Assembly: GCF_023055435.1 (NCBI RefSeq)
Contig: NW_025964013.1
Location: forward strand, 3,534,001 to 3,598,000
Direction of reading: 5' to 3'
Origin: Haliotis rufescens
Lineage: Eukaryota
DNA length: 64,000 nt
Shown: positions 839-60,892 of the stretch, piece by piece
Numbering within the stretch: the first letter of the stretch is position 1
Layout: every line of letters starts with the position of its first letter
Program-made: the position numbers and the translations under genes
The notes under the pieces: model-generated
Databases searched by the model: none
Seen by the model: the letters and a program-made list of their open reading frames with translations, nothing else
What the model was told of the DNA's origin: nothing

Positions 839-3800
839 ATGGCTTCTGTGTTCGTCTCCCCTGTAAAACCTGGCAGATTTGTGTTATTGGTATTGATACT
901 GATGAACCCGAGCCACACACACAGTACTACCACCAATACTATCACAGGTGAGAAACAGTTTTCATATTGTGGGTTGTCTCGTCTTGTGTATGAATGAGCA
1001 CTTGTAGAGGTGCGGGTGCAGGTGTATTTATTAGGTTTCCTACTTAGATTTAGTACTTTGATGTGGATTTGTATTGGAGTTACATGCGATTTCGATAATT
1101 CACTCTGTTTTAAGAAAATGATTATTGAGCATGACAGTGTGTATACATATATTGTTCTAGCAGAATAATTTTCGCATCTTCAAGTGCCATTTTCTACAAT
1201 TTATGGCATGGCTACTAATGTTAGTTTATAAGTATGTTGACCCTTAATTATATAAAACATCAACGCCAGAGAATAACCAGTCTCGATTATCCGACGAAAC
1301 AGATTCCATTGTGCGTGGACGGCAAAATAGCAATGAAAAGTGTATGAGTCTCTGAAACTGTGAATAAATTAACTGAGTCATGGATATCACATAATAAAAC
1401 ATATTCAAATGTATTGGTAAAATATGTATTTCACGTAACTAAAAAGATCCCATGCATTCCTGATCCAAATCAGAATCCATTGCTACTTATAAACAGATAC
1501 TTTTCAATATAGGATATTATATAGTTTTGAATATGATCCTTGGTCTATCAGCACTATTTCCGTGATTGTCGTTATTATTTTTAAAATGTCAAAACGTCGA
1601 CGACGGTCGTCAATATGGCGCAAAATTGTGAAAAGTAGCAGCTTTTGTCATTCGCGTCATAACATGTGGTAGACTAGACGAAACTGCATATCTTTAGTAT
1701 TATATATATAAGGATGTTTGGCCCTCATTCTATGAAGGTTCATACTCCAATGAACTCATACAACTTATAAATGTTTTTCACATTTTGTTTTCCTCAAAGG
1801 ATTTAGGCCTAGATTTAAACACAATTTTATTAAGTATGTGTGACATCATGTTTACACTGACAGCCATACAACAACCAGCCGTATCGCGGAATAAAATAAT
1901 TCCTCAAAACAGAGGTGGCATAAGCGTATGTTTGCATAACTTACTCTTCAGAAACATGGATTCACATAATATCACCATTAGATAAGGAAGGTCTGTCAAA
2001 AACTACCTCAGTAAGTCAGTCACAATGACAGCGCGTTGTACGCCGACACAATACACGTGATGGGAGCGATTTCGGAAGTTCTTAATGAACATGTGGCGGT
2101 TACATGTTTCAGTCATCAGTGATCAATTGGCCGATCATTGAAGGGCGATTAAAGATGATCCAAGTATACACTAAGTTCAATTCATAGATTGCTGTGGACT
2201 GTCACTGTCAACGTGGCCACGGATTGAGTCCACTACGATAGTTTGGATGTGAATTTCCTCGTTTTGTTCACTAGCATGGGTCATAGCAAGGCTAATAGTG
2301 AACGATCATGCAGTCAAGCTCTCTGACTTTTCTCAATGTATGCTAAAACGCTGAGTTCAAGATTAAAGGTCTAAATGATCAGTGAGAACGCTTCTGTATG
2401 TATTCGTGCTAGGGAATTCCCAGGGGTTTCCCCGGGAATGTGGAAGCAGTCCGTCAGTGTTTACGTCATTTAAAAAACACGATTTAGTCCATACACTTAT
2501 GAACGCCAATTTCGCGGTCATGTGACCGACCTTACATCCTAAGGAAAAGCTATACACCATGTAAACTTCAAATTAAAAAAATATATTATATATATGTCTT
2601 ATATATTGTAGTTACAGGCACAATCGATTTCACATTACAAGGATCTTCAACAAAGACTACAAAATACACGACAAGTCCAAATTACAAAAACGGTAATACT
2701 TTCACTATCTGTTGGGAAAAATTGTGTTTTTGTCCTATTGTAAAGTTATTAGAGTGCATATTACATCTGGACATTACATCTGTAAAATATATATCAAGCA
2801 CAAAGATTTCGGATCTAACTGAGACTTTTATATGATTTTGTTATCACATATTCAAATCTTCGTGTAATATATTGATCATATACTTAAGACTGAGTTTTAT
2901 CAAGTTCAGAAAAGCTATATTTTTATTGCAGTGAACAAAACACCAGATATTTCACCGTGGTGAACACAAATGTGATATTTCACTTTTGTTTTTATTGTTA
3001 TTCTCTTGAAAATGTTTCTTTATAAACTGTATTTGTTTCATTTCACTCGTAAATCGAGACTGTTCGTTTTGCAATACGCTATTTTAGTGACTTGATCAGC
3101 GTGTATTCTTTCACTTCTAACAGCGGTTTCGTAGATTTTTAGTATAGTTTCTGTTGAAGTTTATTTTGTATATAATCATATCCAAATGCATGATAAAGAA
3201 TTGTATTGACAACAAATGTTGTTTGTAACTTTTCTTTATATTTGTTAAGATTTTGTAAACAATGAACTACTTTTTAAGTTGCAATTATGTTGTACTAATT
3301 ACATAATTGTTTCTCCTCAGACAACTTAACGTTTGAATCGTCCTGTGCTGCTCTCAATTGGTCGGCAGCGGTGACAGACTGCATCAACAAGGGAGCCGCG
3401 ATATTCTCTTTAGAAGATTTAATTACATCCATCGGCAGCCATGTGTTGAAGAAGGCTACTGCTGAACACACCAAGATATGGATAAACATAAATGGTAATG
3501 TTGTGAACCTTGATCACCCATCACTGCTTTTACTGAACCTTACTCTCCCTCACTTCAAGCTTATGACATGAGCTGCAGTTCTACAATGTTGATTGCTACC
3601 CAGACAGAACAGCGAAACAGATTGACATTCAACTGACAATGGTTAATTATTGTTGAAAACATCCAATTGTTATAAACATATATTATAATGGATGAACATC
3701 CACTGAATAATATTCTTAACCTAACAGATACCTGCTGGACAGCTGACAATTGGTCATTCCAGGTCACCAACTGTAGTGACTCCAACTATTATGTCTGCAA

Positions 3801-6800
3801 ATCGAACACAAGTACCAGTAAGTATCTATGCCAGAGTGTATCTATTGACATCATAAATACTAGTACACAGGCAAGGGCGTATGGCAGTGAGTCGATTAGT
3901 GTGCCCTTCTGTGTAAACAGCCTGCCATGGACTCAAAGTGTTCGTATAAATATACTCCAAGCTCAAATATGATGAGGATAACCTTGTCATCAACTCTCAT
4001 GTTTACGAGGGTTGGACACGATCAGTGATATATGCATCTTGTCAAATGTGAAAGATGAGACAAAAGGCACGGTTAACACATTGATATATTGACATGTTTT
4101 TCGGCTGGCGTTACGTTACACAGCTCGACTTGACTAGTTACGTATGTTAAATGGGTAACACTTCTGATGTAAGTTAATGGTACTATTTATGAGAAATAAG
4201 TTATGTGTATTTAAAACAGATTGTCGCGCTTTCTACATAATTTGTATCTTACATTGACAGGTTCTGATAGGTACGTACCTTGTCGAAAAGAAACCACAGA
4301 TGCTTCCACGCAAGGTACATATCATGTATACAATTGTAGTTCCTCCATATCCAACCGGTGTTATGTATTTTATGTAAAATGTACATTGATAGGCAGAAAC
4401 AAATATTACTTAGCGATATGTATTTTGCATTGATATACACATTAACGCCTCAATTTTCGCGAAACAGTATTTCAATCGGGTAAATAATGAAATATTCCAA
4501 GGCATGTAAGAATATATCAGTAATATATTTTTGTAAACATGGATTACCATTTACCTATTTTATCCTTGACAAGTACAAGTCTACCTATCTGTTGTACTTG
4601 AACGTTGTATCCACACAGGATCTACAACATCAACACCACAGATTCTAACCATAACCCAGGGATCAAACACAAAAGGTAATCCACATGACTGTAAAACTGT
4701 GTAATGGTACATTGTGCGCTTTATCATCGTGTAATCATAGTTTAGGTAGTGTGAATTACTGACAACATTATTTACTTAATACTTAAATTCCTTACTTATA
4801 AAATGGTAAATATGGAGCAGCAAATTTATTCACTGACATATAGTCATAGTCTCACTTGAACATATTACCATCAAGGGAATAGTCCTTCAATCACGTATAC
4901 AGTTGTTAATATCGACCTAGGGGTGGTCGAGTAACCTCGTGGTTAAAGCGTTCGCCCGTCACGTCGAAGACCCGGGTTCGATTCTAGACATGGGCACAAC
5001 GTGTGAAGCCCATTTCTGGTGTCCCCCACCGTAATGTTGCTGGAATATTGCTAAAAGCGGCGTAAAACCATACTCACTCACTAATATCAACCTGTGTGTT
5101 GTCCTCTACATAACGGGGCCACTGTTGGCCCATTTGTCTGAGACGCTGTAATTCGCTGTTGCGTCCCGTGAGCACGCCAGACGCAAATGATTGTGGGTTC
5201 GAATTCCGGTTCGCCCCGATTATCTTTTTAGGTTTGTCAGCACCATCCCCGTGCTCGTGGGTTACACCAAAGTGGTAAACGTTTGATACCTGCATCATTT
5301 GTGCTTATCTCCCACGTGAAGCTGAGACGCCCTGATGTAGCTGGAATATTGTTCAAAGCGACGTTAAACCCCTCTCACTCAGTGACTCATTCTCCATGGT
5401 GACATCTATATTGATATGCAGTAACGAAAATTAATAGGCGATAATTTGTTTCGTTTTGATAAATATACATAAACAGACATATGAACATTTACGCCTCTAT
5501 TTTCGTGAAACAATTTTCAATAACGTAAATGATTAAATACTCCAAGTCGCGAAAGAATATATCAGTAATTTATCAATCACAAACATGGATAACAAATTAC
5601 CTACTTTCTCCTGGTCAAGTACATATATACCACCTGAAGAAGGGGCAAGAAGTAGCATCGAAACGCAATATATACATGGGTAGAGATTACAGACGTTGAT
5701 ACCCAAAGCCATTGCGTCTCCTTGTACTTCAACCTATTCATGACGGTCAAGACCTTATTTTTGCCAATATAATTAAACGCACATATGACAGGACGGGTAT
5801 ATGGCAGCATATATTAGTATGTTTGTACTTGTACGTTGTAATACACACAGGATCTACACCACCGAGTCTAACCATAGGCCCTGGAGCAAACACAAACGGT
5901 ATTTTTTATGACTGTAAAAGTGTATGATTGTTCATTGTGTGTATTATCATGATTTAGTTATGCATTGATTTGGATGTTAAAATGGTATGTTGCTCACCAC
6001 ATATGCCACGCATGACCAACTCGGTGTAACAAACATAAATCTACGTGTTTACATTTGCATGTTTGACATCGTATGTATTCCGCGCTTATTATGTGAATAT
6101 GTTGAGTGAATGCCCAATATGTATGATGTATGCTGTTGAAAAGGTTTTATTTTGGACTCGTAGATTGAAAACAGTTTTCACAGCATTTTAATTTGCCTTA
6201 CGTCAGACTTAACTCCCATTCTTAATTGAAGGTAAATCGAACATGTGATAGCCTCCAATGAAGAGTTCCATTGTATCGGGAGGACTTACAGAACTACTGC
6301 AATACCAATCAGATTCTGAAAAAAAATAATATATTTTCTGTCAAGATGTCATCGATGCATGCTATCTTTAATGATATATATATATTATTCATTTCTGCTC
6401 ACAGTTCCAATCATCCCCTCGATCGTATGTACGATAGCGGTTCTTGCTGCTGTGAGCATTGTTCTTGGGTGTTACTTAATCCAAAGGTAGGAACAGTAAC
6501 TAGTATTGTTTACAATATGATGATTCGTGCAAGTTGTTCTTCCTAGTAAGTGGATGGTACAATTGTGACAAGATCGCTGTCAGACGAATTCATTATACAG
6601 TTTAATTCAAAATGTCAACGCTAGAGAATAATCAGTCTAGACTATCTACCGAAACAGTTTCCATTAAGAGTAAAAGGCAAACTTCTGATTACACTAATAT
6701 GAAAGTCAGTGATGACTGGTACATGTAGGAATGTCCTGCTCTTAGACACACTCCAATGAACAATATTAGTCAGCTAACCCAGCATGCTGTTGAGGATTCC

Positions 6801-7341
6801 GGGTTAGGAACGGTTACCCAGCAACCTGTGGCTGTTTTAAAAGGCGACTTAATTGATTGGGTTGGTCAGGCTCGGTGAGTTTGTAGAAAGTTGTTCATCG
6901 TCCCCCGACCTTTGCTCATAATATCAATCATTGGATTGNNNNNNNNNNNNNNNNNNNNNNNNNNNNNNNNNNNNNNNNNNNNNNNNNNNNNNNNNNNNNN
7001 NNNNNNNNNNNNNNNNNNNNNNNNNNNNNNNNNNNNNNNNNNNNNNNNNNNNNNNNNNNNNNNNNNNNNNNNNNNNNNNNNNNNNNNNNNNNNNNNNNNN
7101 NNNNATCTAGCCTGTCGTCATCAATTGAAAATCCATTTGACCATTGATGGACTATATTTTCAGGAGGAAAACAGGGTCATCGAGAAATCAGGTGAATGTC
7201 GCAAGTGAAGGACAACCGGAAGTGGATTATTACTGTCACCTACAAGCTCGAGATGCTTCAGAAATGAACAATTATGCTACACTTAATGAACCTGAAAACA
7301 ACGAAAGGGCACCTGCAAACCAGTCGGAACAGAATGATTAA
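839..7341 (+). CDS. CTLD receptor 1: type I TM protein (signal peptide, S/T linker, compact C-type lectin domain, S/T stalk, TM, ITAM-like tail), about 290 aa
   Basis: Nine GT-AG exons in continuous frame: 839-947 (MASVFVSPVKPGRFVLLVLILMNPSHTHS...), 2612-2692, 3321-3494 (LNWSAAVTDCINKGAAIFSLED...IWINING), 3728-3817 (TCWTADNWSFQVTNCSDSNYYVCK), 4261-4314, 4619-4675, 5851-5898, TM 6405-6486 (VPIIPSIVCTIAVLAAVSIVLGCYLIQR), tail 7164-7341. Total 873 nt. AATAAA at about 7575. The N-gap at 6939-7104 lies in the last intron. Confidence 0.85.
2412..2432. promoter_or_regulatory. Tandem NF-kB-consensus sites in intron 1
   Basis: GGGAATTCCC followed by GGGGTTTCCC. Confidence 0.35.
4920..5080 (+). mobile_element. 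SINE family 1 (tRNA-derived head, ACTC tail)
   Basis: A box GTAACCTCGTGGTTAAAGC, B box GGTTCGATTC, tail GCTGGAATATTGCTAAAAGCGGCGTAAAAC-(ACTC)n. Confidence 0.85.
5113..5390 (+). mobile_element. SINE family 2 (extended tRNA-like head)
   Basis: Matches the copies at 44761 and 57180: ...GTGGGTTCGAATTCCGGTTCGCCCCGATTAT...AAGCTGA...GTTAAACCC-(ACTC)n. Confidence 0.8.
6939..7104. other. Assembly gap
   Basis: Run of N. Confidence 0.99.
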
Positions 7342-45136: not shown

Positions 45137-46836
45137 ATGTCGGGCGGCTATCTTCTTGTAGTTATCTGTTTATCAACCATCCAATCCACGTATCAGGAAC
45201 TAGCTATAGGTAAGTCTTTGATTATTGCTACGTAGACATATGGACGTTTATGTTACGTGAGATGTTGGAATTGTGGGTTTTCTAATAAGTTTTTTTGCAG
45301 TTTTCGTTTCCCAGTATTATGAGAAGATGAACACGCACTGTTTTGATTGAGGCCAGCTTATAAAATATGAAACCATACATCACACGAAACCCAGCGAAAT
45401 GCCCTGAAATTGTACCACATGTATAGAAATGATAAAATGCAAGCCTCATATTAAACGGGAAGTTTAACATGACGTTACATAAAAGAAAAGAGAGGTAATA
45501 ATGTTTTGACAAAAATGTTTGTGGTTTGTTCTAACTAACCGATATCTACTGTGGAAACCCTATTGTGAAAACCAGTTTGGGATGGTAAATAATATGTCAC
45601 AATAAACACGTTGCAGAATCAACAACTCAAATCACATACGACAAAGGAGAAGACGTCACCTTGACCTGCAACGTCACCTGGTGCAAGAAGGTATGTATTG
45701 CTAGCCGAAGATATTTTACCAACAATTTTCTTCATACAAGTAGCACATTTTACTAATTTTCAAACTGTGACCTGTTTAACTATTAACAGTCATCTGTGTC
45801 GATATTTGTTATTACGTACTGACGGAACTTGCAGTTAACATTTATATGATTGAGATTTATGAACGTCCTGCGAGGAGTACATGTGACAGATAACGACCAG
45901 TTGTATTGCGCGAAAAACTTTATTAAAAAACAGATGACAGAGCGCATGTATGATCAAACTCATCTATAGTAACATCCTGAATATGTTTTTAGTTACGTTG
46001 CAAAAAATATTTAAATAATATCATTGTTAAATTAGCATTTTTTGTCAACATCTTCCTGACACAGTATGTCACTGTGCAGGTCCGTCATGACCACAGCATT
46101 TAAAATTGACGACACGGTTAACAATAAAAGGAAGCTATTCAATGTGTTGCATTGAACATGTGGTGTTTAAAAGTTAGATATAATTGCTTAAGGGGTCATT
46201 TAAAATTAAAATTAAAGATATGTTGAATAGCCGCTGAAATAAAGGTCATTTAATGTAGAATACAAATTGGACGTTTTAGTAATGAATAACTGGAGACTCC
46301 AAAGGCCGCAGTGTACGGACCCTGTATGTTATTGTACATAAGAAGCAGTTGTGAATGTATTCATGCAAGGGAGTTCCCATGGGTTTCTCGGGAGTGTGAT
46401 TGTAGAAGAAAGTCTTGTCAAAACCTAAGAACGGCATAATGTGTTGTTCAAGTTGTTGTTCATGCGCTTACCGAGTTCATCTCCGAGGTCATCTTCGAGG
46501 TCATGTGTTCAGTCTCTCGTCAACGGGTATCGTGTAAATAGTAGTAATTATACTTAACGTCATTTCAAGACAATAACCAGTCTTGTTTATTCACGAAAAC
46601 ATTCCATTTTGCCGGAAAGGGAAAATATAGCTGTGAAAGTGATAAGAATGGACCACTGAAAATCAGTGATGACACCAGGTGTTCGCGAAAAGGGTAGGTA
46701 TTCCTGCCCTACCGTTGACAACGGCCATTCACACAATCTTCATGAAAAGAAATTATGTATGAGAAGAGAAACTTGAGCACACTTTGGTGATATGAAAAGT
46801 TTATGATGAAAATTGTATTTCGAAAGTTAAGCAAAT

Positions 46837-46870
<34 letters not shown>

Positions 46871-49800
46871 ATATATATATACGTTTGAACACCATGTTTC
46901 CATACGTCATTGTAGCAACTGCACATGAGCGACAGACCAGAGACGATGTCTATTGATGAAGTTTATGCACACCTGAATCTAACCTTTTGCACTTGGGTTT
47001 ATGTACTCTTATGCATATCTTGTTTGCCTTTTGATTGATTTTGATTTGGAAACATTAATGTTAACTTTATATCTTTCTTAACAATGAAGATAGTGTGGAA
47101 AAGATGGTACAACCCTGTCCCAATATCTATCGGCAAGAGGATATTTGTGAATCCTGAGAAATATGCTTTACAAGGGAACCAGACTGACTTTCAACTGACA
47201 ATCAAATCTCCGCGTCGTTCGGATGCAGGGGTCTATGCCTGCATATACAAGAGCGCCGGTAGAAAGATCGTACAGCGGTTTGAATTAACGCAAAGAGGTG
47301 ACTACAATTTCTTGTTGATTTTTTTTTGTCTAAGATGTCATCGCATCCCAATTGCGTGGATCGATGGTCATGATGTCAAAGACTGGACTGTCTTATCCAG
47401 ACGCGATCATTTACAGACCGACGTCACGTGGCTTGAATATTGCTGAGTGTGGCGTTATACTACAATCAACTATCCATCTATTCGTTAGAACGAATCGTTA
47501 AATCAAGTGGTATTGGTTTGCTAGGTTGGAGAAAACCACAAGCAGGTTATCGTGGTGAGAGGCTAAGGATCATTACTAGTCTCTTTCGACCAACAATGTG
47601 GGGCTGGGAACTATTCTGTCACGGTGGCATACGGGGCACATGTGCCGTTACCGTGATGAAACAAAGCCATACTCCAAAAAGAGTGTCAGACAACACCCTG
47701 AGGTTTACATATGTGTGTTGTTATCCTTAGAAAACCCGTCTGTGTATTACATATATATCATGAATAGGTTGACCTCTTCACAGTTCACATATACTATGCT
47801 CGTTACAGGTGAAGCTTCAGTCAGTGAAAGCATATCAGGTAGCACTTCTGTTCGAGTTGCCTGTGGTGGAACAGCCAAACTACATTGTGTCGTCAAGGCT
47901 CGCAAGCCATCCAAGGTAATTAATTACCTATGGACAAATACTTAGACGTGACTAGACGTGTCATTCCAACGGCGCTAGGGTAGCCTTGTGGTTCAAGCGT
48001 TCGCTCGTCACGCCGAAATCCCGGGTTCGATTCCACATGGGTGCAATGTGTGAAGCCCATTTCTGGTGAGCCCGCCGTGATATTGCTGGAAATATTGCTA
48101 AAAGCGGCGTAAACGTAAAACCATACTCACTCACTCGTGTTATTCCTACAATCACTATCTGGAACGTGTGTGACGTAACGATATGTGTTGCAGGCGATAT
48201 GGATGGATAAGAGGGGACGATATGTATCTGTTGGCAAGACAAGCCTCAGAAATAGATACAAGAGCTCTTATGACAACGGATCCTGGCAGTTAAAGATTAG
48301 GAACGTAACCGATAACGACTATGGACATTTTACGTGCATGGTGAAGGGTGACACGGTGATGGCCGTGGATGTGTTCCTGAACAGAAAAGGTAGGTCGATT
48401 CACAAGGCAGTTGCGCAAAAGCTTTACGCGTTGTAAATGAAAACAAAGTGCCACAGAAAAATGTGTACGGGTTATTGTCTTAGATAAGTATAACGTTGTA
48501 CCTTCACCAACAAATACTGATGAGATACCATCCATGTCACTGGGTGCTAATAACAAATACAGCATGAAAAGTCAATTATTTGTCAGTTCGCTTCATTTCT
48601 TATTTCCAGGAAACACGTCTTTGTGTTCGTCAGTCCTCGGGGATTACACAGAAAACACGACTTCGCCAACCAATTCAACGCAGAAAAGCGATGGAGGTAA
48701 CTTTTTAAATTTTTTTCATTTTATTTTCATTGCCCATAAGCGTATAGTTGTGTGGTAATTGATATATTCACACAAGTAGCATTTTTTACTAATTCTCATG
48801 ATATACACTGTATATATTCCTTTTACCAGACAATTATACGCCTAATTTAATTATTTACTTGTTTTATTGTTATAGTTACTACACTCTCAACAAAACCAAG
48901 ACCCTCTGACCCACAGACAACAGGTGAGAAATTAGATATAGCTAGTCATACGAGTTATGGGTTTACATAAGTCTTTAGCGTAGAGTTTTTTGGGATAATG
49001 TTTGTTTGTTTGTTGTTTACTCCGCACCCGGCAATATGCCAGCTATGCGTTGGCCGCCATTACATAATCTAGCCTGGACCAGCTAATCAAGGTATTGATA
49101 TTATGAGCAACGATCCACCCCATTGACGTAGGACCCGATCCGTGAAGGTCCGGGGTAGGTCTTCAGCAACGCATGCTTGCCGTAAAAGCCGCCTATGCTT
49201 GTCGTAAGAGGCGACTAACGAGATCGGGTGATCAGGCTAGCTGACTTGGTTGATGCATGTCATCGTATCCCAATTGCGTGGATCGATGCTCATGATGTCA
49301 ATCACTGGATTGTCTGGTCAAGACTCGATCATTTACAGACCGACGTCATGTAACTGGAATATTGCTGAGTGCGGCGTTAAACAACAAACAAACAAACGTG
49401 GGACCCGATCCATTAACTCTCCTCCTACGACAAGAGTAGTTGTGTACAGGGATCTGGTTGCTGGAAGTGACGCCAGTCACGTGACCTGTGTATCCAAGAT
49501 GGCGACACTTCCGGTTCCGGGAGGCGTACGCCTCCAAGATGGCGATACTTCCGGTTCCCGGAGGGCGTGCGCCTCCAAGATGGTGGCTCGGCGCATCCAA
49601 GATGGCGGCGGCGGGAAGGCGGGAAGGCGGGGAAGGCGGGGAAGGCGGGTGGGATGTCACCATCGGAGGAGTGGGTCGAATGGATGACTAGTGCACCATC
49701 AGAGTGGATAGAATTATTGACTCGTGCTGACAACGAGTTCAAGCCAAAGCCAGAACACCACAAGACGCCATGTGACAACTGTAGCTACTTTGGTCGTTGG

Positions 49801-51636
49801 CCACCATGCAGCCAACAGCAAAAGAAGCTAGGATGACGTTTGCGGTTCCTGTTTCCCGTTTTCCGGTTCCCGTTCCCGTCTTTCATCATCTTCCTCCAAA
49901 CGGTCCTTTTCAGGGCCACCTAGCTCTCCCGAAAGAACGCTTTCATCCTTGCTTTGACTACCTCCACCTCCACCACCAAACCAAAACAAAGAACCCTCCT
50001 CCTCCCTCCTTCCTCCTTCCCGCCTTCCTCCTTCCCGCCTTCCCCGCCTTCCTCCTTCCCGCCTTCCCCACCTTCCCGCCTTCCCGCCTTCCCACCGCCG
50101 CCATCTTGGATGCGCCGAGCCGCCATCTTGAATGCGCACTCTCTCCCGGAACCGGAAGTGTCGCCATCTTGGAGGCCTACGCCTCCCGGAACCGAAAGTG
50201 CCGCCATCTTGGAGACGCATGTCTTCCGGAACCGGAAGTGCCACCATCTTGGAGGCGCACCCGCCCTCCCCGGAACCGGAAGTGCCGCCATCTTGGATGC
50301 ACAGGTCACGTGACTATGACGTCACTTCCGGCAACCAGATCCCTGTACACAACTACTGACAAGCATAGGTTACAAAGTCTAACTGCACATTAGCCTGACA
50401 TAATGACAATTGAACTGAAGAAAAACAGACCTGTAAAGACTATTTGCTGTATATGTAATAGATTAACGTGTCGGAAGCTAAAATGCCTCCATCTTCAGTG
50501 ACTTATAACAAGTGATGTACACATTATTAAATAGAGTTGGTAGAACAACGTTAATTATGATTATTTGTAACAAATTTGGTATACACAGGTGGTTTTATTT
50601 TTGATTTGAAAGAGTAGTACGAAACGTGATACTAGTCATTGAACAGTTGGAACTATACTATTAGTTAAAGAACGTATTTTCTACCAGACAAGGACATGAG
50701 GTCAACAATGAAGCACAGGTAGAACAAATTAAAGTACATGTTTTACCTGTTATATTTTATTTCCCACATGAAGGTCTTGTCATTCTTGGAGTTGGAATAT
50801 GCGGAGTTCTGTCAGGAGTGATATGTGTCGTCGCAATCTGTACTGTCAGAAGGTGCGGTTGGTGTTTGCATGCACTCTCTATAACAGTCAATAAAATAAG
50901 TCGTTAGATTTATTTGCACACATTCATAAATGTGCGGTCGTCACAAACGTTTTTATCCACAAATGATTCATTATCAGTTGGGCTACTAGTCTTTCTGTTC
51001 GTGGAAGTTTTGAATGAGTGAGTAAGTATGGTTTTACGACGCTTTTAGCAATATTTCAGTAACATCATGGCGGGGGACACCAGAAAGATTTGAAAAAATG
51101 CTCACAACAAAACACGGGAGAGTTAAATGTTGGGGACACATGTATTACCTTTAAGAAATGCAGTAAGATCGTTAATTCGCCATGCAGTATTGGTCGACTG
51201 TATGTCTTCTTTCGTGACTATAAATGGATTTTTCATGTCAATGAGAAACACGGTAAATGAAAAATGCTTCATGTCGCATTGTTTCTGTAAAAGAATCACG
51301 CATCTGACCAGCACTGCCCTGAGACGGGTGGCCTACAAGGAGCCGAGAACAGAGGAAACATCACTGTCAAGATGGAACTTCAGCATGTCTACTCAGTATG
51401 AGTCAAGAAGCAGCGTGGCGCCACCTCTCGCCAACATTAGGAACTATCGCCGTAGCAGCAGCATGGGTGCTACAACCGGCGTCCACGCAGCTAGCAGCAT
51501 GCACTCCTCCTACCCCTCGTCTGCCCCTCACTCCCTGCTGATCCCTGGGGGCTGTGTGTGCGAACACGCGCCTGACGTCTCTCCAGAACACTCCGTTGTT
51601 GAGGAAGAAGAAACAACGGATGCAGTTGCCGTGTAA
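45137..51636 (+). CDS. Ig receptor B: signal peptide, two V/I-set Ig domains, S/T stalk, TM, tail; about 404 aa; divergent paralog of receptor A
   Basis: Exons 45137-45209 (MSGGYLLVVICLSTIQSTYQ), 45617-45690 (GEDVTLTC), 47090-47297 (IVW...LTIKSPRRSDAGVYAC), 47809-47915 (GTAKLHC), 48194-48389 (AIW...WQLKIRNVTDNDYGHFTC), 48610-48696, 48876-48923, TM 50774-50852, tail 51294-51636. Total 1215 nt in frame. Confidence 0.85.
46837..46881. repeat. (AT)n microsatellite
   Basis: Read directly from the sequence. Confidence 0.95.
47970..48136 (+). mobile_element. SINE family 1
   Basis: Consensus match in the intron that splits Ig domain 2 of receptor B. Confidence 0.85.
49141..49396 (+). mobile_element. 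SINE family 3
   Basis: Near-consensus copy with TSD-like ACGT(A/G)GGACCCGATCC on both sides. Confidence 0.88.
49435..50357. mobile_element. Non-autonomous Polinton/Maverick-like foldback element
   Basis: Termini AGTAGT...ACTACT, inverted repeats of 200 bp or more, and 6-bp TSD GACAAG (49429-49434 and 50358-50363). GC-rich, with repeated CAAGATGGCG and CCGGAAGT motifs. Confidence 0.8.
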
Positions 51637-54433: not shown

Positions 54434-54434
54434 C

Positions 54435-54670
54435 TAGTCCTGACTGATGCCGAGCCTACTGAGATACCATGCCGCAGTTTAACATGAATACACATCTCTG
54501 ACACAGTATACCGACTCCGAGCCGAACAGTCCTTGTTTTAGCCCCTTAATGCCGATCGCCAGACAGGGTAACAACAAGTTTAACGTGTTTTGGTATGACG
54601 CAGCCGAGGATCGAACCCCGGACCTTCCGCTCTCCGGGCGGACGTTCTACCACCAGACCACGAAGTCGGT
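54435..54670 (-). mobile_element. SINE family 4 (tRNA head; related copies at about 15860-16095 and 51880-52240)
   Basis: Shared CAGTCCTTGTTTT...CCCCTTAATGCCGA core. Reverse B box GATCGAACCC. Confidence 0.7.
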
Positions 54671-55189: not shown

Positions 55190-58100
55190 ATGACTTCTGT
55201 GAGTATCGCGCTGTTTGTGTGTGTTCTTATCCTCTGGGTTGCCATGGTGATGATGACAAAGACGGGTAAGTACAAATGGCCAGTTCGCATTTTGGAAACG
55301 TTAATATTGGGAAAACTACAGATATTATAAAGGGTTATAATCATGCGAATAGTACAGAAATGCATGTGTTCGTAATATGATGTTGTTGATTGCAGCATGA
55401 TGTTTTGTCTCAATGTACAATGTGATTCAGCAAAACTTACGTTGCCCTGTTTCATCGTTTAAGATCTGTATCACTTCGCGCTTGCCTCCTTCTGAGACTG
55501 CGTGATATGACTGAAATATTATTCAAAACGGCGTTAACCGAACTTAACCCCGGCGTTAGCCTGGAATAGGATTTCGAGTGCAGCATTTGATGATCATGTG
55601 ATTTCACAAACATGTTAAACTGAGTTTCTCCTATAACCGACAGAGGTAAGTGCCTCACAATGCTGTCATCTAACTAACACCAACATTTGCACATCGTTTA
55701 TCAAATACATACATGTATACTACTCAAAAGAAGTTAAGGACAACCCTATTCTCTCACAACACTTTATGTCGTGTTGATTTTAGCACTTGGATACAATTTG
55801 TGCTGGTTGTCTCAAAGTCTGTACATATTTGCAGGCTACACATCAAACAAAACATCTTATAACCGTTACTGTTCACTAGCACCTACCTAGAAAGGCATTG
55901 CATGTAATTTTTGTTATCTGCTTTGGTTGATTACAGGTCATTTATGAGTTGACCTAATTTACTTTCATATGTTCTCCTCCATTATTGGTGGAAATGAAGA
56001 ATGTCTGTCTGTCTGTCTGTCTGTCTGTCCTGTAGTTAATCTTTCATGCCTTGCAGTTAAGTGGCACCCGATTCTTTCATATTGTTATAGCTAATCTACC
56101 ATGCCATGATAGATTAACTATAGTAATATGAAAGTGAGTGAGTATGGTTTTACGTCGCTTTTAGCAATATTCCAGCAATATCACGGCGGGGGACACCAGA
56201 AATGGGCTTCACACATTGTACCCATGTCGGGAATCGAACCCGGGTCTTCGGCGTGACGAGCGAACGCTTTAACCACTAGGCTACCCGACGGCCCCGTAAT
56301 ATGAAAGAATCGGGTGCCACTTTTGAGTAGTACAGTAAACTACGTTCGTAACGAACACACTTATAACGAACTGACGGATAAAACAAACCGTTTTAGAGGG
56401 GTCCCATCCGTTTGCTGTATACATATGTTGTATGTAGTTCATACCGAACTTCGGTTATAACGAACTAAAATTAGTGGTCCCTTTGAGTTCGTTATAACCG
56501 TAGTTTACTGTATATGTAGAATACATCATACCAGTAAAGAGATACGTTTTCCCCTTGCAAATTAGTTTGAAAATGATGGCGGTTGAAATGTTGAAGGGAG
56601 AAGTCACGTTACAAACTGACTCAAGCGTCAAACCGACATGTATATAGAGAATCTCACCCTCGTGTCTTTTGATTTGAAATATATCAACACGAGTTGATAA
56701 AAATGGAAAAAAACTCCTAGGATTTTATCAACGAATGTTGGTATATTTGATAATTTATCAAAAGACACGAGATGAGATTTTATTTATCATCCAACATCAT
56801 TCTTCCATTTTTTTCAGTTTGTGGACAGAAAAATCAGTGTCTTAAGTGTAAAAGCCACTGCTAACAGCTTCAGTAGCAGAGTCATTAGTGATTTCATGTT
56901 ATTGTGACGTCATTGACGTCACAAAATTAAATGGTCTACAAAACATTGTGTGGCAATTCTACAATGTAGATATCGCTTGATCTCACCCAAGCGATATCTC
57001 CTCTGGGAGCCAGTTTTGGATGATAAAAAGATGATATCAGAATGTGTATGAATGCTCTGGATTTGTTCTAGATGGAAGCTTTAAAGGTAGTTTGACTCCC
57101 AGACAGGTATTGCCCCGTGGGTCATTCAGTGTCATTGACACATTCTGAAGCAATGTGTTCTGTGTGTTCTGAATGTACAGGCGGCACGGGTGGCCCAGTC
57201 GTTTTAGGCGCAGCGATTCGCTGTGCAGAGTTGCGTCCCCTGGACACGCCAGAAACCTATGATTGTGGGTTCGAATCCCGGTTCACCCCGATTATGTTTG
57301 TAGGTTTGCCAGGACCATACCCGTGCTCGTGGGTTTCACCAAAGTGGTAAACGTCTGAGACCTGCATCACTTCGGCTTTCCTCCCACATCAAGCTGACAC
57401 GCTGTGATATAACAGGAATAATGTTAAAAGCGGCGTTAAACCCAACTCACTCACTCACTTTGAATGTACATGGAATCCCGTTAGTCGGGTAATCCTGCTT
57501 TCTGGCCGACGGCTTTTGAGGAGGACCAGTACCAAAACTAATGTCACATGACTAGGTTCCAGTATTCGTTAATCTTAAACATGGTTAATCCAGACGATCT
57601 GTATACGATATCGTCCACATTATCGAGGTTACATTATGTCTCTAACTTTTCTCATAAACCACGACGGATAGCATCATTAGCCTTGTATATACAAAATAGT
57701 GTCATACTTCACGGGAGGCTGTGAGTTTCTCCTGACATTGGACCTTGTATCGATATCAGTGACAGGGAAAACGGAAGGGTCCGTCACGACTACATGCCAG
57801 TGTTTCGTTAACTCGGGAATGTTTTAAACTGGACGGTTTCCCCGAGGACGTTACAGTTTGTATGAACGGGGTTTCACTGTGTTAAATACGTAGATCTAGG
57901 GCAGTCATTCTGTGAAGGACTATGCCAGAAGATGTTAATCGTTTGAGTCCCTCAACGTGGTAGACACGTGAAGTTGTTCCTCCAGTTTGTAAACTTGTCA
58001 CGTGTTCATAATCCTTGTCCTGGATCGAAAATAACATTATCGTACAATTTCCTGAAAAACACGAAACAAGTCGTGACATGCATTTAAACTAATGTTATTT

Positions 58101-60892
58101 CATATTTCCATAATTAGGTTTGAATGACTACACCTTAATAATCCAGGAATCGGGAGTTTGCTTTGTAGACAGATTAAATATTTATTGAACGCTTGCCATG
58201 TAGGATCAGTATATGTTTAAAAAAAGATGGCAAAACCCTTTCCACAACAAAGCAGAATCCATTGACAGAAGGTTACTACTTCCCAAGCGTGTGTCTATGA
58301 GTCTCCACCAAATAGTGATCGCCAAAAGTTAAACTTATTCCGTCCAACCAGGAAAAAATAAGAGGCTAGGAAAAGATATATGCAGTGATTCACTTTAACC
58401 AAGGTGGCCATAATTACTCATCAATATCATTAAGTCATTAAGTTGTGATCATATGGAAGTGACATTAAACCCCTTTCTTATAATTGCGTTTTACATATCT
58501 TTAGAAATCCCACCGTCCAGCTTCGATCTGTCTTCGACCAAGGCGAATATGTCAGTGGCAGAGCGAGATTGTCTGACCAGGAACGGCAGTATGGTACACC
58601 TTACAAACCTCAGTAGGTCATCACTTCAAACAGCCTTCTTGGAAGTAACGAATAGGTTCGGCAAGGCAGTATGGCTTGGCTACAATGACACCGAAATCCA
58701 AGGTAAAGAGGGAACTGTATGTGTGAGAATGTGTAGTGTNNNNNNNNNNNNNNNNNNNNNNNNNNNNNNNNNNNNNNNNNNNNNNNNNNNNNNNNNNNNN
58801 NNNNNNNNNNNNNNNNNNNNNNNNNNNNNNNNNNNNNNNNNNNNNNNNNNNNNNNNNNNNNNNNNNNNNNNNNNNNNNNNNNNNNNNNNNNNNNNNNNNN
58901 NNNNNNNNNNNNNNNNNNNNNNNNNNNNNNNNNNNNNNNNNNNNNNNNNNCACGTGTCGCCTGGGATTAGATACTAAAGAGGGATAAAGTGAGTACTTTT
59001 GAGTTAAATACTGGCAACACTTTGATAAATATTATATTTGTTCGTTGTTTAACACCGCGATCAGCAATATTCCTGCCATGTGATGGCGGTTTGTTAATAA
59101 TCGACCAGATAATACAGTGACTGATATCATGAGCACCGATCCATCCACGCAACTGGGATACGACGACATGCATCCACCAAGTCAGCGAGCCTGACCACCC
59201 GATCACGTTAGTCGCCTCTTACGACAAGCATGGGTTGCTGAAGACCAATTCTACCCCGGATCTTCACAAGTCCTATGATAAATATGCCTATATCAGTAAC
59301 TAATGCTATCGAGTGAATAAAATCCGTCACATTCAAGTGTTAAAAACTGAAAGTACTTTAACTATACTCAAATGCTCCTTTTACACAACACAACAGCAGG
59401 CAACTGCAACGTCCTGTACCCCAAAACGCCAGGCGCTGCCAGAATAAAGACATCCTCCTGTGACGAGCTGCATCACTACATATGCTTCCAGAGCACGGTC
59501 GACAGTGGTAAGTGTTTCTGAAACTTCTGGGGCGGTGGGGTAGCCGAGTGGTTAAGGTACATGGGTACAATGTGTGAAGCCCATGTCTAGTGTCCACCGC
59601 CGTGATGTTGCTGGAATATTGCTAAAAGCGGCGTAAAACCATACTCCCTCTGAAACTACTGTTTTACCACGAAAATATACACAAACACATAATCTATCGA
59701 TAACGGGTACATGGCGTCTTTTAAGTTATTGTTACTACACTGCTGATATTAATTATGTTTCAATGAACGCAATAATGAACCGGACTACTTGTTATACGTT
59801 AGTGTCAATTCCACGTAAAGTAGATTTTCATATTTCAAAATTCAAAAAATATTTTTTTTAAATCGGATAGTGAGTCAACGGTTTCCAACACGGGACAGAT
59901 GACGCAAATTGCCGACATGATTGAAACTGAAACAATACTCGTCTACACTTAGCTCGTGTTTTAGGTGAACTCTCGTTGACGATAAACTGTCTGTTCATTC
60001 CCGACAGACATGAAATAGGTTTAAACAAAAAACAAATATTAAGGGGTTTAAGTGATGATTAATCAAACCGCCTTAAGACAATGAAGTTATCTTAAAATCC
60101 AGGCGCAAATATTATCTCATTTTTGAAAGGTGAGTATTCCGTCCATAAAGAATGCAAATGAAACAAAATGAAAGATGAAAAATGTTATATTTCAAAAGCC
60201 ACTTCACAAAATAGGCATTGGTCGTATTATTTTATCAAATTTGACCGATTCAGACCCAAAACCTGGCAGAGCCCACTTGACCGGAAGCGTTATGTCCCTT
60301 CGTAAAACGTAAGGTGCTTGCTGTGAAATGCTTTATTTTATCGACTTTCTGTGCACCAAGTACACCGGTCAATAAGTGTGCACCGTTTGTTATACTATTG
60401 CATACAATTTAATGTTTCTCCCGAAGTAGTTGTATTGTCAGGAACGATCGGGAACAGGCTAGTGATAATTAATGTTGCCTTTGGACCATATATTACATCC
60501 GACTGATTTTTGCTAATTAATGCTGCGTTGTGCATGTCTCTCGAGTAACCATATATACGTATTCCGTGATGGATGTAGTTATATATACGTATCGTACGTA
60601 CCTGAATGCAAGTAGATGACAAGACAGGCACATGGTTGACAATAGTTGTCATCAGCCTAATTGACTCCTTATTTGCCTCATTTGAATACACACACATGCA
60701 GGGAAAATAATATGTTTATGTTTATTCCTGTGTTTGATAATAGTTGTCATCAGCCTTCCTGGGTCTTAACCTGCCTCATTCAAATATACTCATACATGAA
60801 TGTAACAGACGTATGTTTAAATCTATCCCTGTGTTCGTTATTCCATACAGGGAGCGACATGACGACCAGCGCTACATCGCCTGCAAATTTCT
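55190..60892 (+). CDS. CTLD receptor 3 (divergent; 3' part beyond the window)
   Basis: Exons 55190-55265 (MTSVSIALFVCVLILWVAMVMMTKT), 58505-58702 (NMSVAERDCLTRNGSMVHL...VWLGYND), 59397-59507 (NCNVLY...SSCDELHHYICFQ), 60851-60892 (S/T stalk). All are phase 1, with the CTLD split as in receptors 1 and 2. Confidence 0.75.
55718..56332. mobile_element. Tc1/mariner-like non-autonomous element
   Basis: TACTACTCAAAA...TTTTGAGTAGTA termini and an internal inverted repeat GTGGCACCCGATTCTTTCATATT. Confidence 0.5.
56134..56295 (-). mobile_element. SINE family 1 nested in a Tc1-like MITE
   Basis: Reverse-complement copy with TSD GTAATATGAAA. Confidence 0.88.
56331..56512. mobile_element. pogo/Tigger-like MITE (second copy)
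   Basis: TACAGTAAACTACG...CGTAGTTTACTGTA terminal inverted repeats. Confidence 0.8.
57180..57458 (+). mobile_element. SINE family 2, full length
   Basis: Head through ACTC tail. Flanking repeat TGAATGTACA. Confidence 0.88.
58740..58950. other. Assembly gap
   Basis: Run of N. Confidence 0.99.
59035..59268 (-). mobile_element. SINE family 3
   Basis: Reverse complement (TTAGTCGCCTCTTACGACAAGCATGGG). Confidence 0.85.
59529..59648 (+). mobile_element. SINE family 1, internally deleted
   Basis: Head and tail of the consensus present. Flanking repeat TCTGAAACT. Confidence 0.75.

What the first reader, a model, noticed from the sequence alone, without database searches (positions are those of the whole stretch)
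839..60892. Mixed lectin/Ig immunoreceptor complex with a shared modular exon grammar and tyrosine-signalling tails
Seen: up to seven single-pass receptor units in 60 kb (3 CTLD, 2 double-Ig, 2 TM+tail units without a domain), none visible as a whole in the ORF track. Each of the six complete units has a phase 1-to-2 TM exon of 79-88 nt and one terminal tail exon with Tyr motifs, and ectodomain modules are bounded by phase-1 introns. Known: vertebrate NK-complex and leukocyte-receptor-complex loci, and the polymorphic transmembrane clusters of the snail Biomphalaria, are organised as such clusters. Inference: this is an invertebrate immune or allorecognition receptor complex that combines lectin and Ig recognition modules with interchangeable signalling tails.
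Basis: partly seen in the sequence, partly recalled or inferred. Interest (0 to 1): 0.88.

Follow-up and report, generated by a model that had tools for sequence, protein, structure and literature searches.

The report
Abalone lectin-like and Ig receptor cluster
This 64-kb stretch of the red abalone genome holds three membrane receptors with a stripped-down C-type-lectin-like head, a small adaptor-like membrane protein and two two-Ig membrane proteins; the lectin-like genes behave like vertebrate "paired" immune receptors, but their expression and function are untested.

Summary
The window is Haliotis rufescens DNA (contig C235, 3,534,001-3,598,000). [quoted passage not shown] My splice models of three units equal NCBI proteins residue for residue: unit 2 = LOC124136739, unit 7 = the first 141 aa of LOC124129751, and unit 3 = LOC124136738, a 181-aa TM+tail protein. 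Unit 1 and the two 8-exon double-Ig genes give open frames with canonical splice sites. Unit 4 is unverified. TM exons are phase 1-to-2 and 79-85 nt long, each followed by one terminal tail exon. Both assembly gaps lie in introns.

The CTLD genes belong to an array of at least 9 genes found only in Haliotis. Two old tail types sit on heads that are alike within each species, and head dN/dS is 2-3.6. The Ig genes are an old, unexpanded pair. Their tails have no YxxL-type motif and share nothing with the lectin tails. No ITIM exists anywhere.

The scan has noted similar paired-type clusters elsewhere in this genome.

The parts
839..7341 (+). CTLD receptor unit 1 (short, ITAM-like tail). Seven exons: 839-947 signal, 3321-3494 CTLD-A, 3728-3817 CTLD-B, 4261-4314 WYVPC stalk, 4619-4675 S/T stalk, 6405-6486 TM, 7164-7341 tail.
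   Evidence: The model gives a 247-aa open frame with all sites AG/GT and phases 0-1,1-1,1-1,1-1,1-1,1-2,2-0. It is 88% identical to NCBI paralogs P0123 and P0125. No NCBI protein for this unit was returned.
6939..7104 (.). Assembly gap inside unit 1's TM-to-tail intron.
   Evidence: The flanking exons join in frame, as in the paralogs.
17527..17635 (+). Orphan extra copy of the signal-peptide exon, made by the tandem duplication 16576-17853 / 17901-19176.
18850..24529 (+). CTLD receptor unit 2 (long tail) = LOC124136739. Exons: 18850-18958, (cassette ~20697-20750 in isoform X1), 21769-21942, 22176-22265, 22709-22762, 23557-23613, 23901-23982 TM, 24160-24529 tail.
   Evidence: The seven-exon model translates exactly to XP_048236532.1 (P0120, 311 aa). 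Isoform X1 (P0127) adds 18 aa. In the AlphaFold model residues 38-125 have pLDDT about 90, and Foldseek hits are all CTLDs.
28311..30102 (+). Unit 3 = LOC124136738, a 181-aa protein with a short N-terminus, a TM segment, a juxtamembrane CxxC and a Tyr-bearing tail. Exons: 28311-28380, 29102-29186 (TM, 85 nt, phase 1-to-2), 29712-30102.
   Evidence: The model is identical to XP_048236487.1 (P0128). Annotated orthologs exist in H. cracherodii (95%), H. rubra (59%) and H. asinina (51%). It is single-copy in the genome.
30731..31999 (+). Unit 4, an unverified candidate: TM exon 30834-30921 (88 nt), or an ATG-started exon 30731-30921, plus a possible tail exon 31732-31999.
   Evidence: Splice sites and phases fit. 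There is no paralog, no annotated relative and no clear first exon.
34164..43297 (-). Two-Ig receptor gene on the minus strand. Eight exons: 43297-43222 signal, 41948-41848 Ig1a, 41566-41350 Ig1b, 40918-40815 Ig2a, 39682-39481 Ig2b, 38920-38840 stalk, 38104-38020 TM (85 nt), 34665-34164 tail.
   Evidence: The model gives a 455-aa open frame with canonical sites. Pfam V-set/ig/I-set hits on the b-halves are below threshold. The tail is single-copy, and its 3 Tyr sit in no known motif.
45137..51636 (+). Two-Ig receptor gene on the plus strand. Eight exons: 45137-45209 signal, 45617-45690 Ig1a, 47090-47297 Ig1b, 47809-47915 Ig2a, 48194-48389 Ig2b, 48610-48696 stalk, 50774-50852 TM (79 nt), 51294-51636 tail.
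   Evidence: The model gives a 388-aa open frame with the same phase pattern as the minus-strand gene. PDB phmmer hits are Ig domains only (E 1.7e-7 and 2.8e-5). The ESM Atlas places Ig1b with I-set/V-set clusters.
55190..60892 (+). CTLD receptor unit 7 = 5' part of LOC124129751. Exons: 55190-55265 signal, 58505-58702 CTLD-A, 59400-59507 CTLD-B, 60851-60892 stalk. Its last stalk exon, TM exon (82 nt) and tail exon lie beyond the window, at about 65.6, 66.37-66.45 and 69.29-69.76 kb in window-equivalent coordinates.
   Evidence: The four exons equal the first 141 aa of XP_048236557.1 (P0008). The downstream exons were found in L012 at 100% identity. The AlphaFold/Foldseek result is a CTLD.
58740..58950 (.). 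Assembly gap inside unit 7's CTLD-A to CTLD-B intron.

Best explanation
SHOWN. The window is the downstream end of a tandem array of type I single-pass receptors found only in Haliotis. The array has at least 9 genes on contig C235 (3.37-3.60 Mb), and a second group of 3 lies on contig C594. The head of each receptor is a compact CTLD of about 80 residues. It keeps the four core cysteines but lacks the long sugar- and calcium-binding loop.

The heads sit on a mucin-like stalk, a TM helix ending in Cys-x3-4-Arg, and one of two old cytoplasmic tails:
- a 58-aa tail with YCHL-x10-YATL (unit 1 and two upstream paralogs);
- a 122-aa tail with a conserved hemITAM-like DGEYDIL, YSHL and a YDTTTxPxYDRRPVDxIYDR box (unit 2).

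Heads are kept alike within each species and differ between species. Tails group by type across species. Recent paralogs differ mostly by amino-acid-changing substitutions in the CTLD. This is the pattern of vertebrate paired receptors.

A conserved 181-aa gene inside the array (LOC124136738) has the build of a LAT-like transmembrane adaptor. A head-to-head pair of two-Ig TM genes with the same exon layout is embedded between the lectin-like genes.

INFERRED. The CTLD receptors most likely bind a protein or other non-sugar ligand at the cell surface. They would signal through tyrosine phosphorylation of the YxxL motifs and recruitment of Syk-type SH2 kinases, as shown for the oyster receptors CgCLec-TM1 and CgCLec-HTM. 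The two tails would give different outputs. Whether the target is a pathogen, non-self tissue or a gamete is open. The Ig genes may only be neighbours.
For: - Organism and gene models: my splice models equal NCBI H. rufescens proteins residue for residue (names).
- CTLD: the exon-A profile hits only CTLDs in the PDB. AlphaFold plus Foldseek gives only CTLDs for P0120 and P0008. Cysteines are conserved in 18 family members.
- Array: exon A has 11 genomic copies, 8 of them on C235 and all on the + strand.
- Genus restriction: all 10 of the best short hits that I looked up, among 1.84 billion representatives, are Haliotis; the rest of the list is mostly long multi-CTLD proteins.
- Two tails: the short tail has 3 copies and the long tail 7 hits. 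The units are 91-96% identical over 1-4780 vs 18016-23718, then unrelated.
- Concerted heads, old tails: CTLD identity between tail types is 94% within H. rubra and 90% within H. cracherodii, against 63-68% between species. Long tails are 69-94% identical across four species.
- Diversifying change: dN/dS is 2.1-3.6, dN is 0.067-0.097 against intron divergence of 0.013-0.030, and Fisher p is 0.004-0.016.
- Motifs. DGEYDIL is conserved in H. cracherodii, H. rubra and H. asinina.
- Adaptor build and conserved CxxC.
- Oyster hemITAM-Syk precedent: review PMC13027682.
Against:
- No ITIM or ITSM occurs in any tail, so an activating/inhibitory pairing is not evident.
- The first YxxL of the short tail is not kept in H. 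rubra, which reads YFSHL.
- Pfam Lectin_C stays below threshold on the full proteins (15-18 bits against a cut-off of 22.6).
- The dN/dS values rest on few substitutions (1-2.5 synonymous).
- The Ig genes have no recognised signalling motif, are not expanded and share no tail with the lectin genes.
- Unit 1 has no NCBI protein and could be silent.
Confidence: 0.55

Rival explanations
1. The cluster serves reproductive or other non-immune cell-to-cell recognition. The fast-evolving CTLD heads would act in gamete or tissue recognition; abalone are a classic case of rapidly evolving fertilisation proteins (my own knowledge). The tails would mediate adhesion-linked signalling.
For: Positive selection and tandem duplication fit reproductive proteins as well as immune ones. 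Nothing immune-specific was found: there is no ITIM and no domain tied to immunity.
Against: The TM-plus-YxxL build matches known mollusc haemocyte lectin receptors (PMC13027682). The paired-tail pattern is typical of immune receptor families. A LAT-like adaptor lies inside the array.
Confidence: 0.15
2. The lectin-like genes are endocytic or scavenger-type receptors. The tyrosine motifs would be YxxPhi and NPxY sorting signals for uptake and recycling, not SH2 docking sites, as in the type I CTLD proteins CD302 and layilin.
For: The type I orientation with a single CTLD resembles CD302, layilin and chondrolectin (my own knowledge). Unit 7's tail has NPVY and YTPL. Unit 2 has YDIL, YSHL and YDRI, all of which also fit YxxPhi.
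Against: The acidic-Gly context DGEYDIL and the dual YxxL with 10-residue spacing are more typical of (hem)ITAMs. The long conserved tail box exceeds what a sorting signal needs.
Confidence: 0.15
3. The 'mixed complex' is coincidental. The two Ig genes would be ordinary adhesion molecules (I-set, two exons per domain, like IgLON, DIP or NCAM-type genes) that merely lie inside the lectin array. The shared exon layout would be the general phase-1 rule for extracellular modules.
For: The Ig genes are an old, unexpanded pair. Their tails are unique and lack motifs. The best PDB hits are Robo, contactin, NCAM, CEACAM, FGFR, DIP and IgLON. Phase 1-1 modules are usual in animal surface proteins (my own knowledge).
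Against: All gene types here also share the less general phase 1-to-2 TM exon of 79-85 nt that ends in a split Arg codon with a Cys 3-5 residues before it, followed by a single tail exon. The Ig pair is flanked on both sides by array members.
Confidence: 0.45
4. Some units are dead copies or annotation artefacts: unit 1, unit 4 or both are not expressed genes.
For: No NCBI protein was found for unit 1. Unit 4 has no relative anywhere. An orphan signal exon at 17527-17635 shows partial duplications do occur here.
Against: Unit 1 keeps seven intact exons, canonical sites and an open 247-aa frame, and its tail is 95-98% identical to two annotated paralogs.
Confidence: 0.3

Closest known systems
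Oyster transmembrane C-type lectin receptors CgCLec-TM1 and CgCLec-HTM (hemITAM, Syk-ERK-IL-17 pathway in haemocytes; review PMC13027682)
   Same: Mollusc, single CTLD, single TM segment, and a cytoplasmic YxxL in an acidic context. Unit 2 reads DGEYDIL.
   Different: The abalone CTLD is compact (about 80 aa), has no long loop and therefore no EPN/QPD-WND sugar site, and stays below the Pfam threshold. By sequence the family is confined to Haliotis. It has two alternative tails. LPS or bacterial binding and Syk use are untested.
Vertebrate paired receptors of the NK gene complex and leukocyte receptor complex (Ly49, NKG2, KIR, LILR, PIR, SIRP)
   Same: Tandem arrays; heads near-identical and homogenised within a species; fast amino-acid change in the head; alternative signalling ends.
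   Different: These are type I, not type II as in NKC lectin-like receptors. There is no ITIM arm and no charged TM residue for an adaptor, so both tails look activating-like. There is no homology beyond the CTLD fold.
Biomphalaria glabrata polymorphic transmembrane clusters (GRC/PTC1, PTC2; PMC7494358)
   Same: Gastropod clusters of single-pass TM genes proposed to act in recognition at the cell surface.
   Different: The PTC genes are defined by hyperdivergent haplotypes and by association with schistosome resistance. Haplotype diversity could not be tested here, and the paper text searched mentions no lectin or tyrosine motifs.
Type I single-CTLD membrane proteins (CD302, layilin, chondrolectin; my own knowledge)
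   Same: Signal peptide, one CTLD, TM segment, and a short tail with Tyr-based motifs.
   Different: Those are conserved single-copy genes with full-length CTLDs. This is a diversifying tandem family with a compact CTLD.
Transmembrane adaptor proteins LAT, NTAL, PAG and LIME (my own knowledge) - for unit 3 only
   Same: A very short ectodomain (about 23 aa, no signal peptide), one TM segment, a juxtamembrane CxxC conserved in four species, and a disordered tail with several conserved Tyr.
   Different: There is no sequence similarity. The Tyr contexts (YIES, YHMT, YAKP, YVTV, YDTD) are not YxN Grb2 sites. Palmitoylation and phosphorylation are untested.
Two-exon-per-domain I-set adhesion molecules (NCAM, IgLON, DIP/Dpr, lachesin) - for the Ig pair
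   Same: Each Ig domain is split by a phase-0 intron and bounded by phase-1 introns. The best PDB hits include Robo, contactin, NCAM2, DIPs and IgLONs.
   Different: The Ig pair has a TM segment plus long unique cytoplasmic tails, not GPI anchors, and only two domains. No family-specific match was found.

Membership tests
[quoted passage not shown] | CTLD fold (two helices, two sheets) | tested here: met
   AlphaFold models of P0120 (pLDDT about 90 over residues 38-125) and P0008 were compared by Foldseek. Every top PDB hit is a CTLD, at probability 1.00 and E about 1e-4.
[quoted passage not shown] | Four core cysteines (C1-C4, C2-C3) and the W..A...C / WI signature | tested here: met
   These are conserved in 18 family members. 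The exon-A profile hits only CTLDs in the PDB, at E 1e-7 to 1e-4.
[quoted passage not shown] | Pfam Lectin_C (PF00059) at gathering score | tested here: not met
   The score is 15-18 bits against a cut-off of 22.6 on P0004, P0006, P0008 and P0012. P0120 itself was not scanned. Its paralogs P0001 and P0005 gave no Lectin_C hit.
Ca-dependent carbohydrate-binding C-type lectins (sensu stricto) | Long loop region with an EPN/QPD and WND calcium/sugar site | tested here: not met
   The core from F..SSC to YYVC is only 78-79 aa. Only a few residues lie between the WI strand and C2. There is no EPN, QPD or WND.
ITAM-bearing receptors | YxxL/I - x6-8 (relaxed to 12) - YxxL/I in the cytoplasmic tail | tested here: inconclusive
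   Unit 1 reads YCHL-x10-YATL. H. cracherodii keeps it as YSHL-x10-YAAL. In H. rubra the first motif reads YFSHL. The spacing is outside the classical 6-8.
hemITAM receptors (Dectin-1, CLEC-2, CgCLec-HTM type) | A single YxxL preceded by acidic residues and Gly (DEDGYxxL-like) | tested here: met
   Unit 2 reads DGEYDIL, which is conserved in H. cracherodii, H. rubra and H. asinina. Syk binding was not tested.
ITIM/ITSM inhibitory receptors | [SIVL]xYxx[ILV] or TxYxx[VI] | tested here: not met
   No match was found in any of the seven tails.
Paired receptor families | Near-identical ectodomains on different signalling ends, with heads homogenised within a species | tested here: met
   Heads are 90-94% identical between tail types within H. 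cracherodii and H. rubra, against 63-68% between species. Tails group by type.
Paired receptor families | Opposed outputs (activating versus inhibitory) | not testable with these tools
   No ITIM and no charged TM residue was seen. Signalling assays are needed.
Immunoglobulin superfamily | Ig domain with a B-strand and an F-strand Cys and the D.G.Y.C motif | tested here: met
   Both genes show LTC/LPC/LHC ... Y(A/T)C or TC pairs in each domain. Half-domain exons hit Ig domains (E 1.7e-7, 2.8e-5). Pfam hits are below threshold because only half-domains could be searched.
Polymorphic transmembrane clusters (Biomphalaria PTC type) | Hyperdivergent haplotypes, gene presence/absence variation, link to resistance | not testable with these tools
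Transmembrane adaptor proteins (LAT-like), unit 3 | Short ectodomain, TM segment, juxtamembrane CxxC, several tail Tyr | tested here: met
   This covers architecture only; there is no homology and no functional test.

The most novel reading that the evidence does not exclude
Abalone have independently evolved a paired-receptor system like the vertebrate NK gene complex. Its parts would be a compact, non-sugar-binding CTLD head that is homogenised by gene conversion yet driven to diversify, two ancient alternative tails (hemITAM-like long and dual-YxxL short) that can be swapped by recombination or read-through splicing, and a dedicated LAT-like adaptor encoded inside the array. Together these would form a self/non-self or pathogen recognition locus.
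Probability: 0.25. Interest if true: 0.8.

Novelty: new variant of a known kind. Interest (0 to 1): 0.55.

Why it matters
The genes are already in NCBI, but only as 'uncharacterized protein'. Pfam does not recognise their domain, and no paper in the searched library names them.

This work shows that they form a genus-restricted array of compact-CTLD receptors with two old tails, heads that evolve in concert, and an excess of amino-acid change. That gives a concrete candidate for how a gastropod builds variable surface recognition without antibodies. It offers a second mollusc case to set beside the oyster hemITAM lectins and the Biomphalaria TM1 clusters.

Abalone suffer withering syndrome and herpesvirus losses in aquaculture and conservation (my own knowledge), so a polymorphic recognition locus would be a useful marker. 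The value is limited until expression and polymorphism are measured.

Tried and rejected
3. Pfam on single exons gave nothing for the CTLD exons and tails, and only sub-threshold Ig hits.
4. Single-exon phmmer against the PDB was marginal for the CTLD exons (E 0.026-1.5). It was replaced by a paralog profile.
5. The long version of CTLD exon B (acceptor at 22127/22128) was rejected. That site is AT in unit 1, and the NCBI model uses 22175/22176.
6. The first tail acceptors I considered for unit 2 (24035, 24123) were rejected in favour of 24159/24160, which reproduces P0120.
7. Tails shared between the Ig and lectin genes: none found.
8. ITIM or ITSM in any tail: none found.
9. Unit 4: no support from paralogs and no convincing first exon.
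11. Joined splice models were never sent to any search, folding or look-up tool. They were only checked for frame and for identity to public proteins inside scripts. Whole-domain Ig searches and folds were therefore left out.
I redid it from coordinates.

Full report
WHAT THE DNA IS. The window is G000:C235:3,534,001-3,598,000 of a 1.33-Gb assembly. NCBI proteins of Haliotis rufescens (red abalone) map to it at 100% identity. It is AT-rich animal DNA. It holds a non-LTR retrotransposon with endonuclease and reverse transcriptase at 9819-14035, many copies of a roughly 165-bp tRNA-derived SINE, and several minisatellites.

GAPS FIRST. Gap 6939-7104 lies between unit 1's TM exon (6405-6486) and tail exon (7164-7341). 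The acceptor TTTTCAG|G sits 59 nt after the gap. The join gives ...CYLIQR|RKTGSS, as in the annotated paralogs P0123 and P0125. Gap 58740-58950 lies between unit 7's CTLD exons A (58505-58702) and B (59400-59507). The NCBI protein P0008 and every aligned family member run across that junction with no residue missing. Both gaps are therefore intronic and the frames are continuous. Whether the assembly is physically collinear cannot be shown with these tools.

THE LECTIN-LIKE UNITS. A self-comparison shows that 1-4780 and 18016-23718 are 91-96% identical and then diverge. In each copy I found seven exons with canonical AG/GT sites: signal peptide, CTLD-A, CTLD-B, a 54-nt WYVPC exon, a 57-nt Ser/Thr stalk exon, an 82-nt TM exon and one terminal tail exon. 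The phases are 0-1, 1-1, 1-1, 1-1, 1-1, 1-2 and 2-0.

The unit 2 model translates exactly to XP_048236532.1 (LOC124136739 isoform X2, 311 aa). Isoform X1 adds an 18-aa cassette exon near 20697-20750. Unit 1 gives an open 247-aa frame that is 88% identical to two annotated upstream paralogs, but no NCBI protein for it was returned. Unit 7's four exons in the window equal the first 141 aa of XP_048236557.1 (LOC124129751). Its last stalk exon, its 82-nt phase 1-to-2 TM exon and its single tail exon lie 1.6, 2.4 and 5.3 kb beyond the window's end.

I made two corrections. The WYVPC and cassette exons had been missed.

IS IT A CTLD? Pfam does not call it, either on exons or on the full proteins, where Lectin_C scores 15-18 bits against a cut-off of 22.6. 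Single exons give only marginal PDB hits.

Stronger tests do call it. A profile of exon A from 11 genomic paralogs plus unit 7 hits 17 PDB sequences, and all are CTLDs: the mannose-receptor family, DEC-205, PLA2R, type II antifreeze protein, KLRB1 and REG4, at E 1e-7 to 0.6. AlphaFold2 with the family alignment folds residues 38-125 of P0120 at pLDDT of about 90. Foldseek then returns only CTLD structures: L-SIGN, MBP-C, CD69, NKR-P1, Clr-11, LOX-1, CLEC5A and CLEC9A. P0008 gives the same result.

The core from F..SSC to YYVC is only 78-79 aa. It keeps the four core cysteines but has almost nothing between the WI strand and the second cysteine. This makes it a compact CTLD with no long loop and no EPN/QPD-WND site. 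Sugar binding in the classical way is unlikely.

THE FAMILY. Exon A has 8 copies on C235 between 3.37 and 3.56 Mb, all on the + strand, and 3 copies on C594. With unit 7 the C235 array has at least 9 genes. Among 1.84 billion cluster representatives the profile finds 106 proteins. All 10 of the best short hits that I looked up are Haliotis 'uncharacterized proteins' from H. rufescens, H. rubra, H. asinina and H. cracherodii. The rest of the list is mostly long multi-CTLD proteins. No paper in the searched library names these loci.

TWO TAILS, ONE HEAD. Unit 1's 58-aa tail (YCHL-x10-YATL) occurs three times in the genome, behind the three CTLD units at 3.502, 3.518 and 3.537 Mb. Unit 2's 122-aa tail gives seven genomic hits. 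It is 69-94% identical to the long tails of H. cracherodii, H. rubra and H. asinina, including DGEYDIL, YSHL and the box YDTTTxPxYDRRPVDxIYDR. Short and long tails are unrelated.

The CTLD cores behave in the opposite way. Long- and short-tailed genes are 94% identical within H. rubra and 90% within H. cracherodii, but only 63-68% identical between H. rubra and the Californian species. So the tails are old, and the heads are kept alike within each species by gene conversion or repeated recombination. In H. rubra, NCBI isoforms X2 and X7 of one locus share the signal and CTLD-A exons and then run into the two different downstream cassettes. This hints at read-through splicing, though these are predicted models.

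Among the three youngest H. rufescens paralogs, the CTLD exons differ at 13-18.5 nonsynonymous but only 1-2.5 synonymous sites. dN/dS is 2.1-3.6. dN is 0.067-0.097, while the 233-nt intron between the two exons differs by 1.3-3.0%. Fisher tests of nonsynonymous sites against synonymous-plus-intron sites give p = 0.004-0.016. The counts are small, but all three comparisons agree.

UNIT 3 AND UNIT 4. Unit 3 has three exons (28311-28380, 29102-29186, 29712-30102) and equals XP_048236487.1 (LOC124136738, 181 aa) exactly. Annotated orthologs exist in three other Haliotis species. It has about 23 extracellular residues, one TM segment, a juxtamembrane CxxC kept in all four species, and a tail with conserved blocks (CSPYH.THLH, GYAKPFHPGRGVSLS, STWYDTD). 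The build is that of LAT/PAG-type adaptors, with no sequence similarity to them. It is single-copy and has its own start exon, so it is a gene in its own right and not only an alternative cassette of unit 2.

Unit 4 (TM exon 30834-30921, 88 nt; possible tail exon from 31732) has fitting phases. It has no paralog, no annotated relative and no good first exon. I leave it unverified.

THE IG GENES. Two genes lie head to head, with start codons at 43297 (minus strand) and 45137 (plus strand). Each has eight exons: signal, Ig1a, Ig1b, Ig2a, Ig2b, stalk, TM and tail. Both have phases 0-1, 1-0, 0-1, 1-0, 0-1, 1-1, 1-2 and 2-0, all sites AG/GT, and open frames of 455 and 388 aa. The half-domain exons hit Ig domains only: Robo, contactin, NCAM2, antibody VL, CEACAM, FGFR, DIP and IgLON (E down to 1.7e-7). 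Pfam V-set, ig and I-set hits stay below threshold because only half-domains could be searched. The ESM Atlas groups Ig1b with I-set/V-set clusters.

The genome holds no other close copy. Ig2b finds only its neighbour at 44% identity plus two weak hits on another contig, and Ig1b finds only itself. The two tails are single-copy, unlike each other and unlike any lectin tail. They contain no YxxL/I/V/M, ITIM, ITSM or ITAM, and their Tyr content is 1.8-3.5%. I could not reach their NCBI models. I did not send joined sequences to any search or folding tool, so whole-domain tests were left out.

THE SHARED LAYOUT. Every verified gene has extracellular modules bounded by phase-1 introns. Each has a TM exon of 79-85 nt that starts in phase 1 and ends in phase 2 inside an Arg codon, in most units with a Cys 3-5 residues upstream. 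Each then has a single terminal tail exon. Phase 1-1 modules are common in animal surface proteins (my own knowledge). The common TM-exon form is less general. It could reflect old exon shuffling, but the TM exons show no convincing sequence homology between the lectin and Ig genes.

HOW IT PROBABLY WORKS. The gene structures, folds, array, tail types and substitution pattern are shown. The function is inferred: surface receptors that bind a non-sugar ligand through a variable compact CTLD. They would signal through phosphorylated YxxL motifs to Syk-type kinases, as reported for the oyster receptors CgCLec-TM1 and CgCLec-HTM (review PMC13027682). The two tails would give different outputs, and LOC124136738 is a possible adaptor. 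The cluster resembles the single-pass TM gene clusters of Biomphalaria that control schistosome resistance (PMC7494358), but haplotype diversity was not testable.

Three rival readings remain open: gamete or tissue recognition, endocytic sorting motifs, and an unrelated adhesion role for the Ig pair. No expression data could be obtained.

EARLIER NOTES OF THIS SCAN. Notes on this window had already flagged the dN excess, the ITAM-like tail, the adaptor-like gene, the serial cassettes, the Ig pair and the minisatellite. I tested most of these here. Notes on other DNA of the same genome describe similar clusters, including a followed-up 'paired-type lectin-CUB receptor' array. So this kind of locus recurs in red abalone, and the scan has seen it before.

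VERDICT. The immune-complex reading is plausible for the lectin-like array but unproven, and it is weak for the Ig genes. This is a new variant of a known kind and is of moderate interest.

Noticed in passing
window 9819-14035 (+): A near-complete non-LTR retrotransposon lies between units 1 and 2. It has a coiled-coil ORF1, an Exo_endo_phos endonuclease and an RVT_1 reverse transcriptase (E 2e-34), in several frames.
   Followed up: partly
window 4919-5082, 8131-8298, 8849-9013, 32506-32668, 40155-40322(-), 47971-48136, 52472-52625(-), 56133-56295(-): About 165-bp SINE copies, 83-96% alike. Two of them carry Rfam tRNA matches (32518-32576, 56226-56284), so the SINE is tRNA-derived. Copies sit inside introns of both Ig genes. 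A second repeat of about 230 bp occurs at 5158-5388, 8387-8655, 44760-44992, 53456-53715, 54123-54312 and 57184-57453.
   Followed up: partly
window 35054-38026: A 52-bp minisatellite of about 59 copies (98% matches over 35708-38026) starts at about 38026, within the 16 nt downstream of the donor of the minus-strand Ig gene's TM exon (38020). It fills most of the TM-to-tail intron and gives strong GC skew.
   Followed up: partly
window 61097-63994: C-rich tandem repeats (periods 22/89 and 25/49, GC skew down to -0.86) fill the intron after unit 7's 60851-60892 exon. They create long spurious Pro-rich ORFs of 436-553 aa on the + strand.
   Followed up: partly
window 21033-21494: A 52-bp tandem repeat (9 copies, 93% matches) lies in intron 1 of unit 2. 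It largely accounts for the size difference from unit 1's intron.
   Followed up: no
window 16576-17853 vs 17901-19176: A 1.3-kb tandem duplication (96% identity) left an orphan second copy of the signal-peptide exon (17527-17635) upstream of unit 2. It could serve as an alternative first exon.
   Followed up: partly
H. rubra proteins P0122, P0004, P0130 (LOC124257045 isoforms X2, X7, X6): NCBI models of one H. rubra locus combine one signal/CTLD-A exon set with two different downstream cassettes (long tail or short tail). A further isoform uses another signal exon and skips CTLD-A. This reflects either read-through splicing between tandem units or merged annotation.
   Followed up: partly
P0002 / P0007 / P0126 (LOC124136742 at C235 ~3.4355 Mb and orthologs): Some array members carry two compact CTLDs in tandem, joined by the WYIPC linker, and a shortened long-type tail (KPIKYAVRVQSALYH...). 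The conserved juxtamembrane box KPIKYAVR...YH..HP.PG is shared by most of the family and has no known function.
   Followed up: no
window 49400-50400: A GC-rich repeat (40/80-bp period; TRF array scored only at 50119-50297, outer limits read from ORFs) lies in the stalk-to-TM intron of the plus-strand Ig gene. It gives many overlapping spurious ORFs on both strands.
   Followed up: no
window 54596-54667 (-): A tRNA-like Rfam match just above the gathering score (30.4 bits) lies outside the mapped SINE copies. I did not check whether it is a tRNA gene or another SINE head.
   Followed up: no
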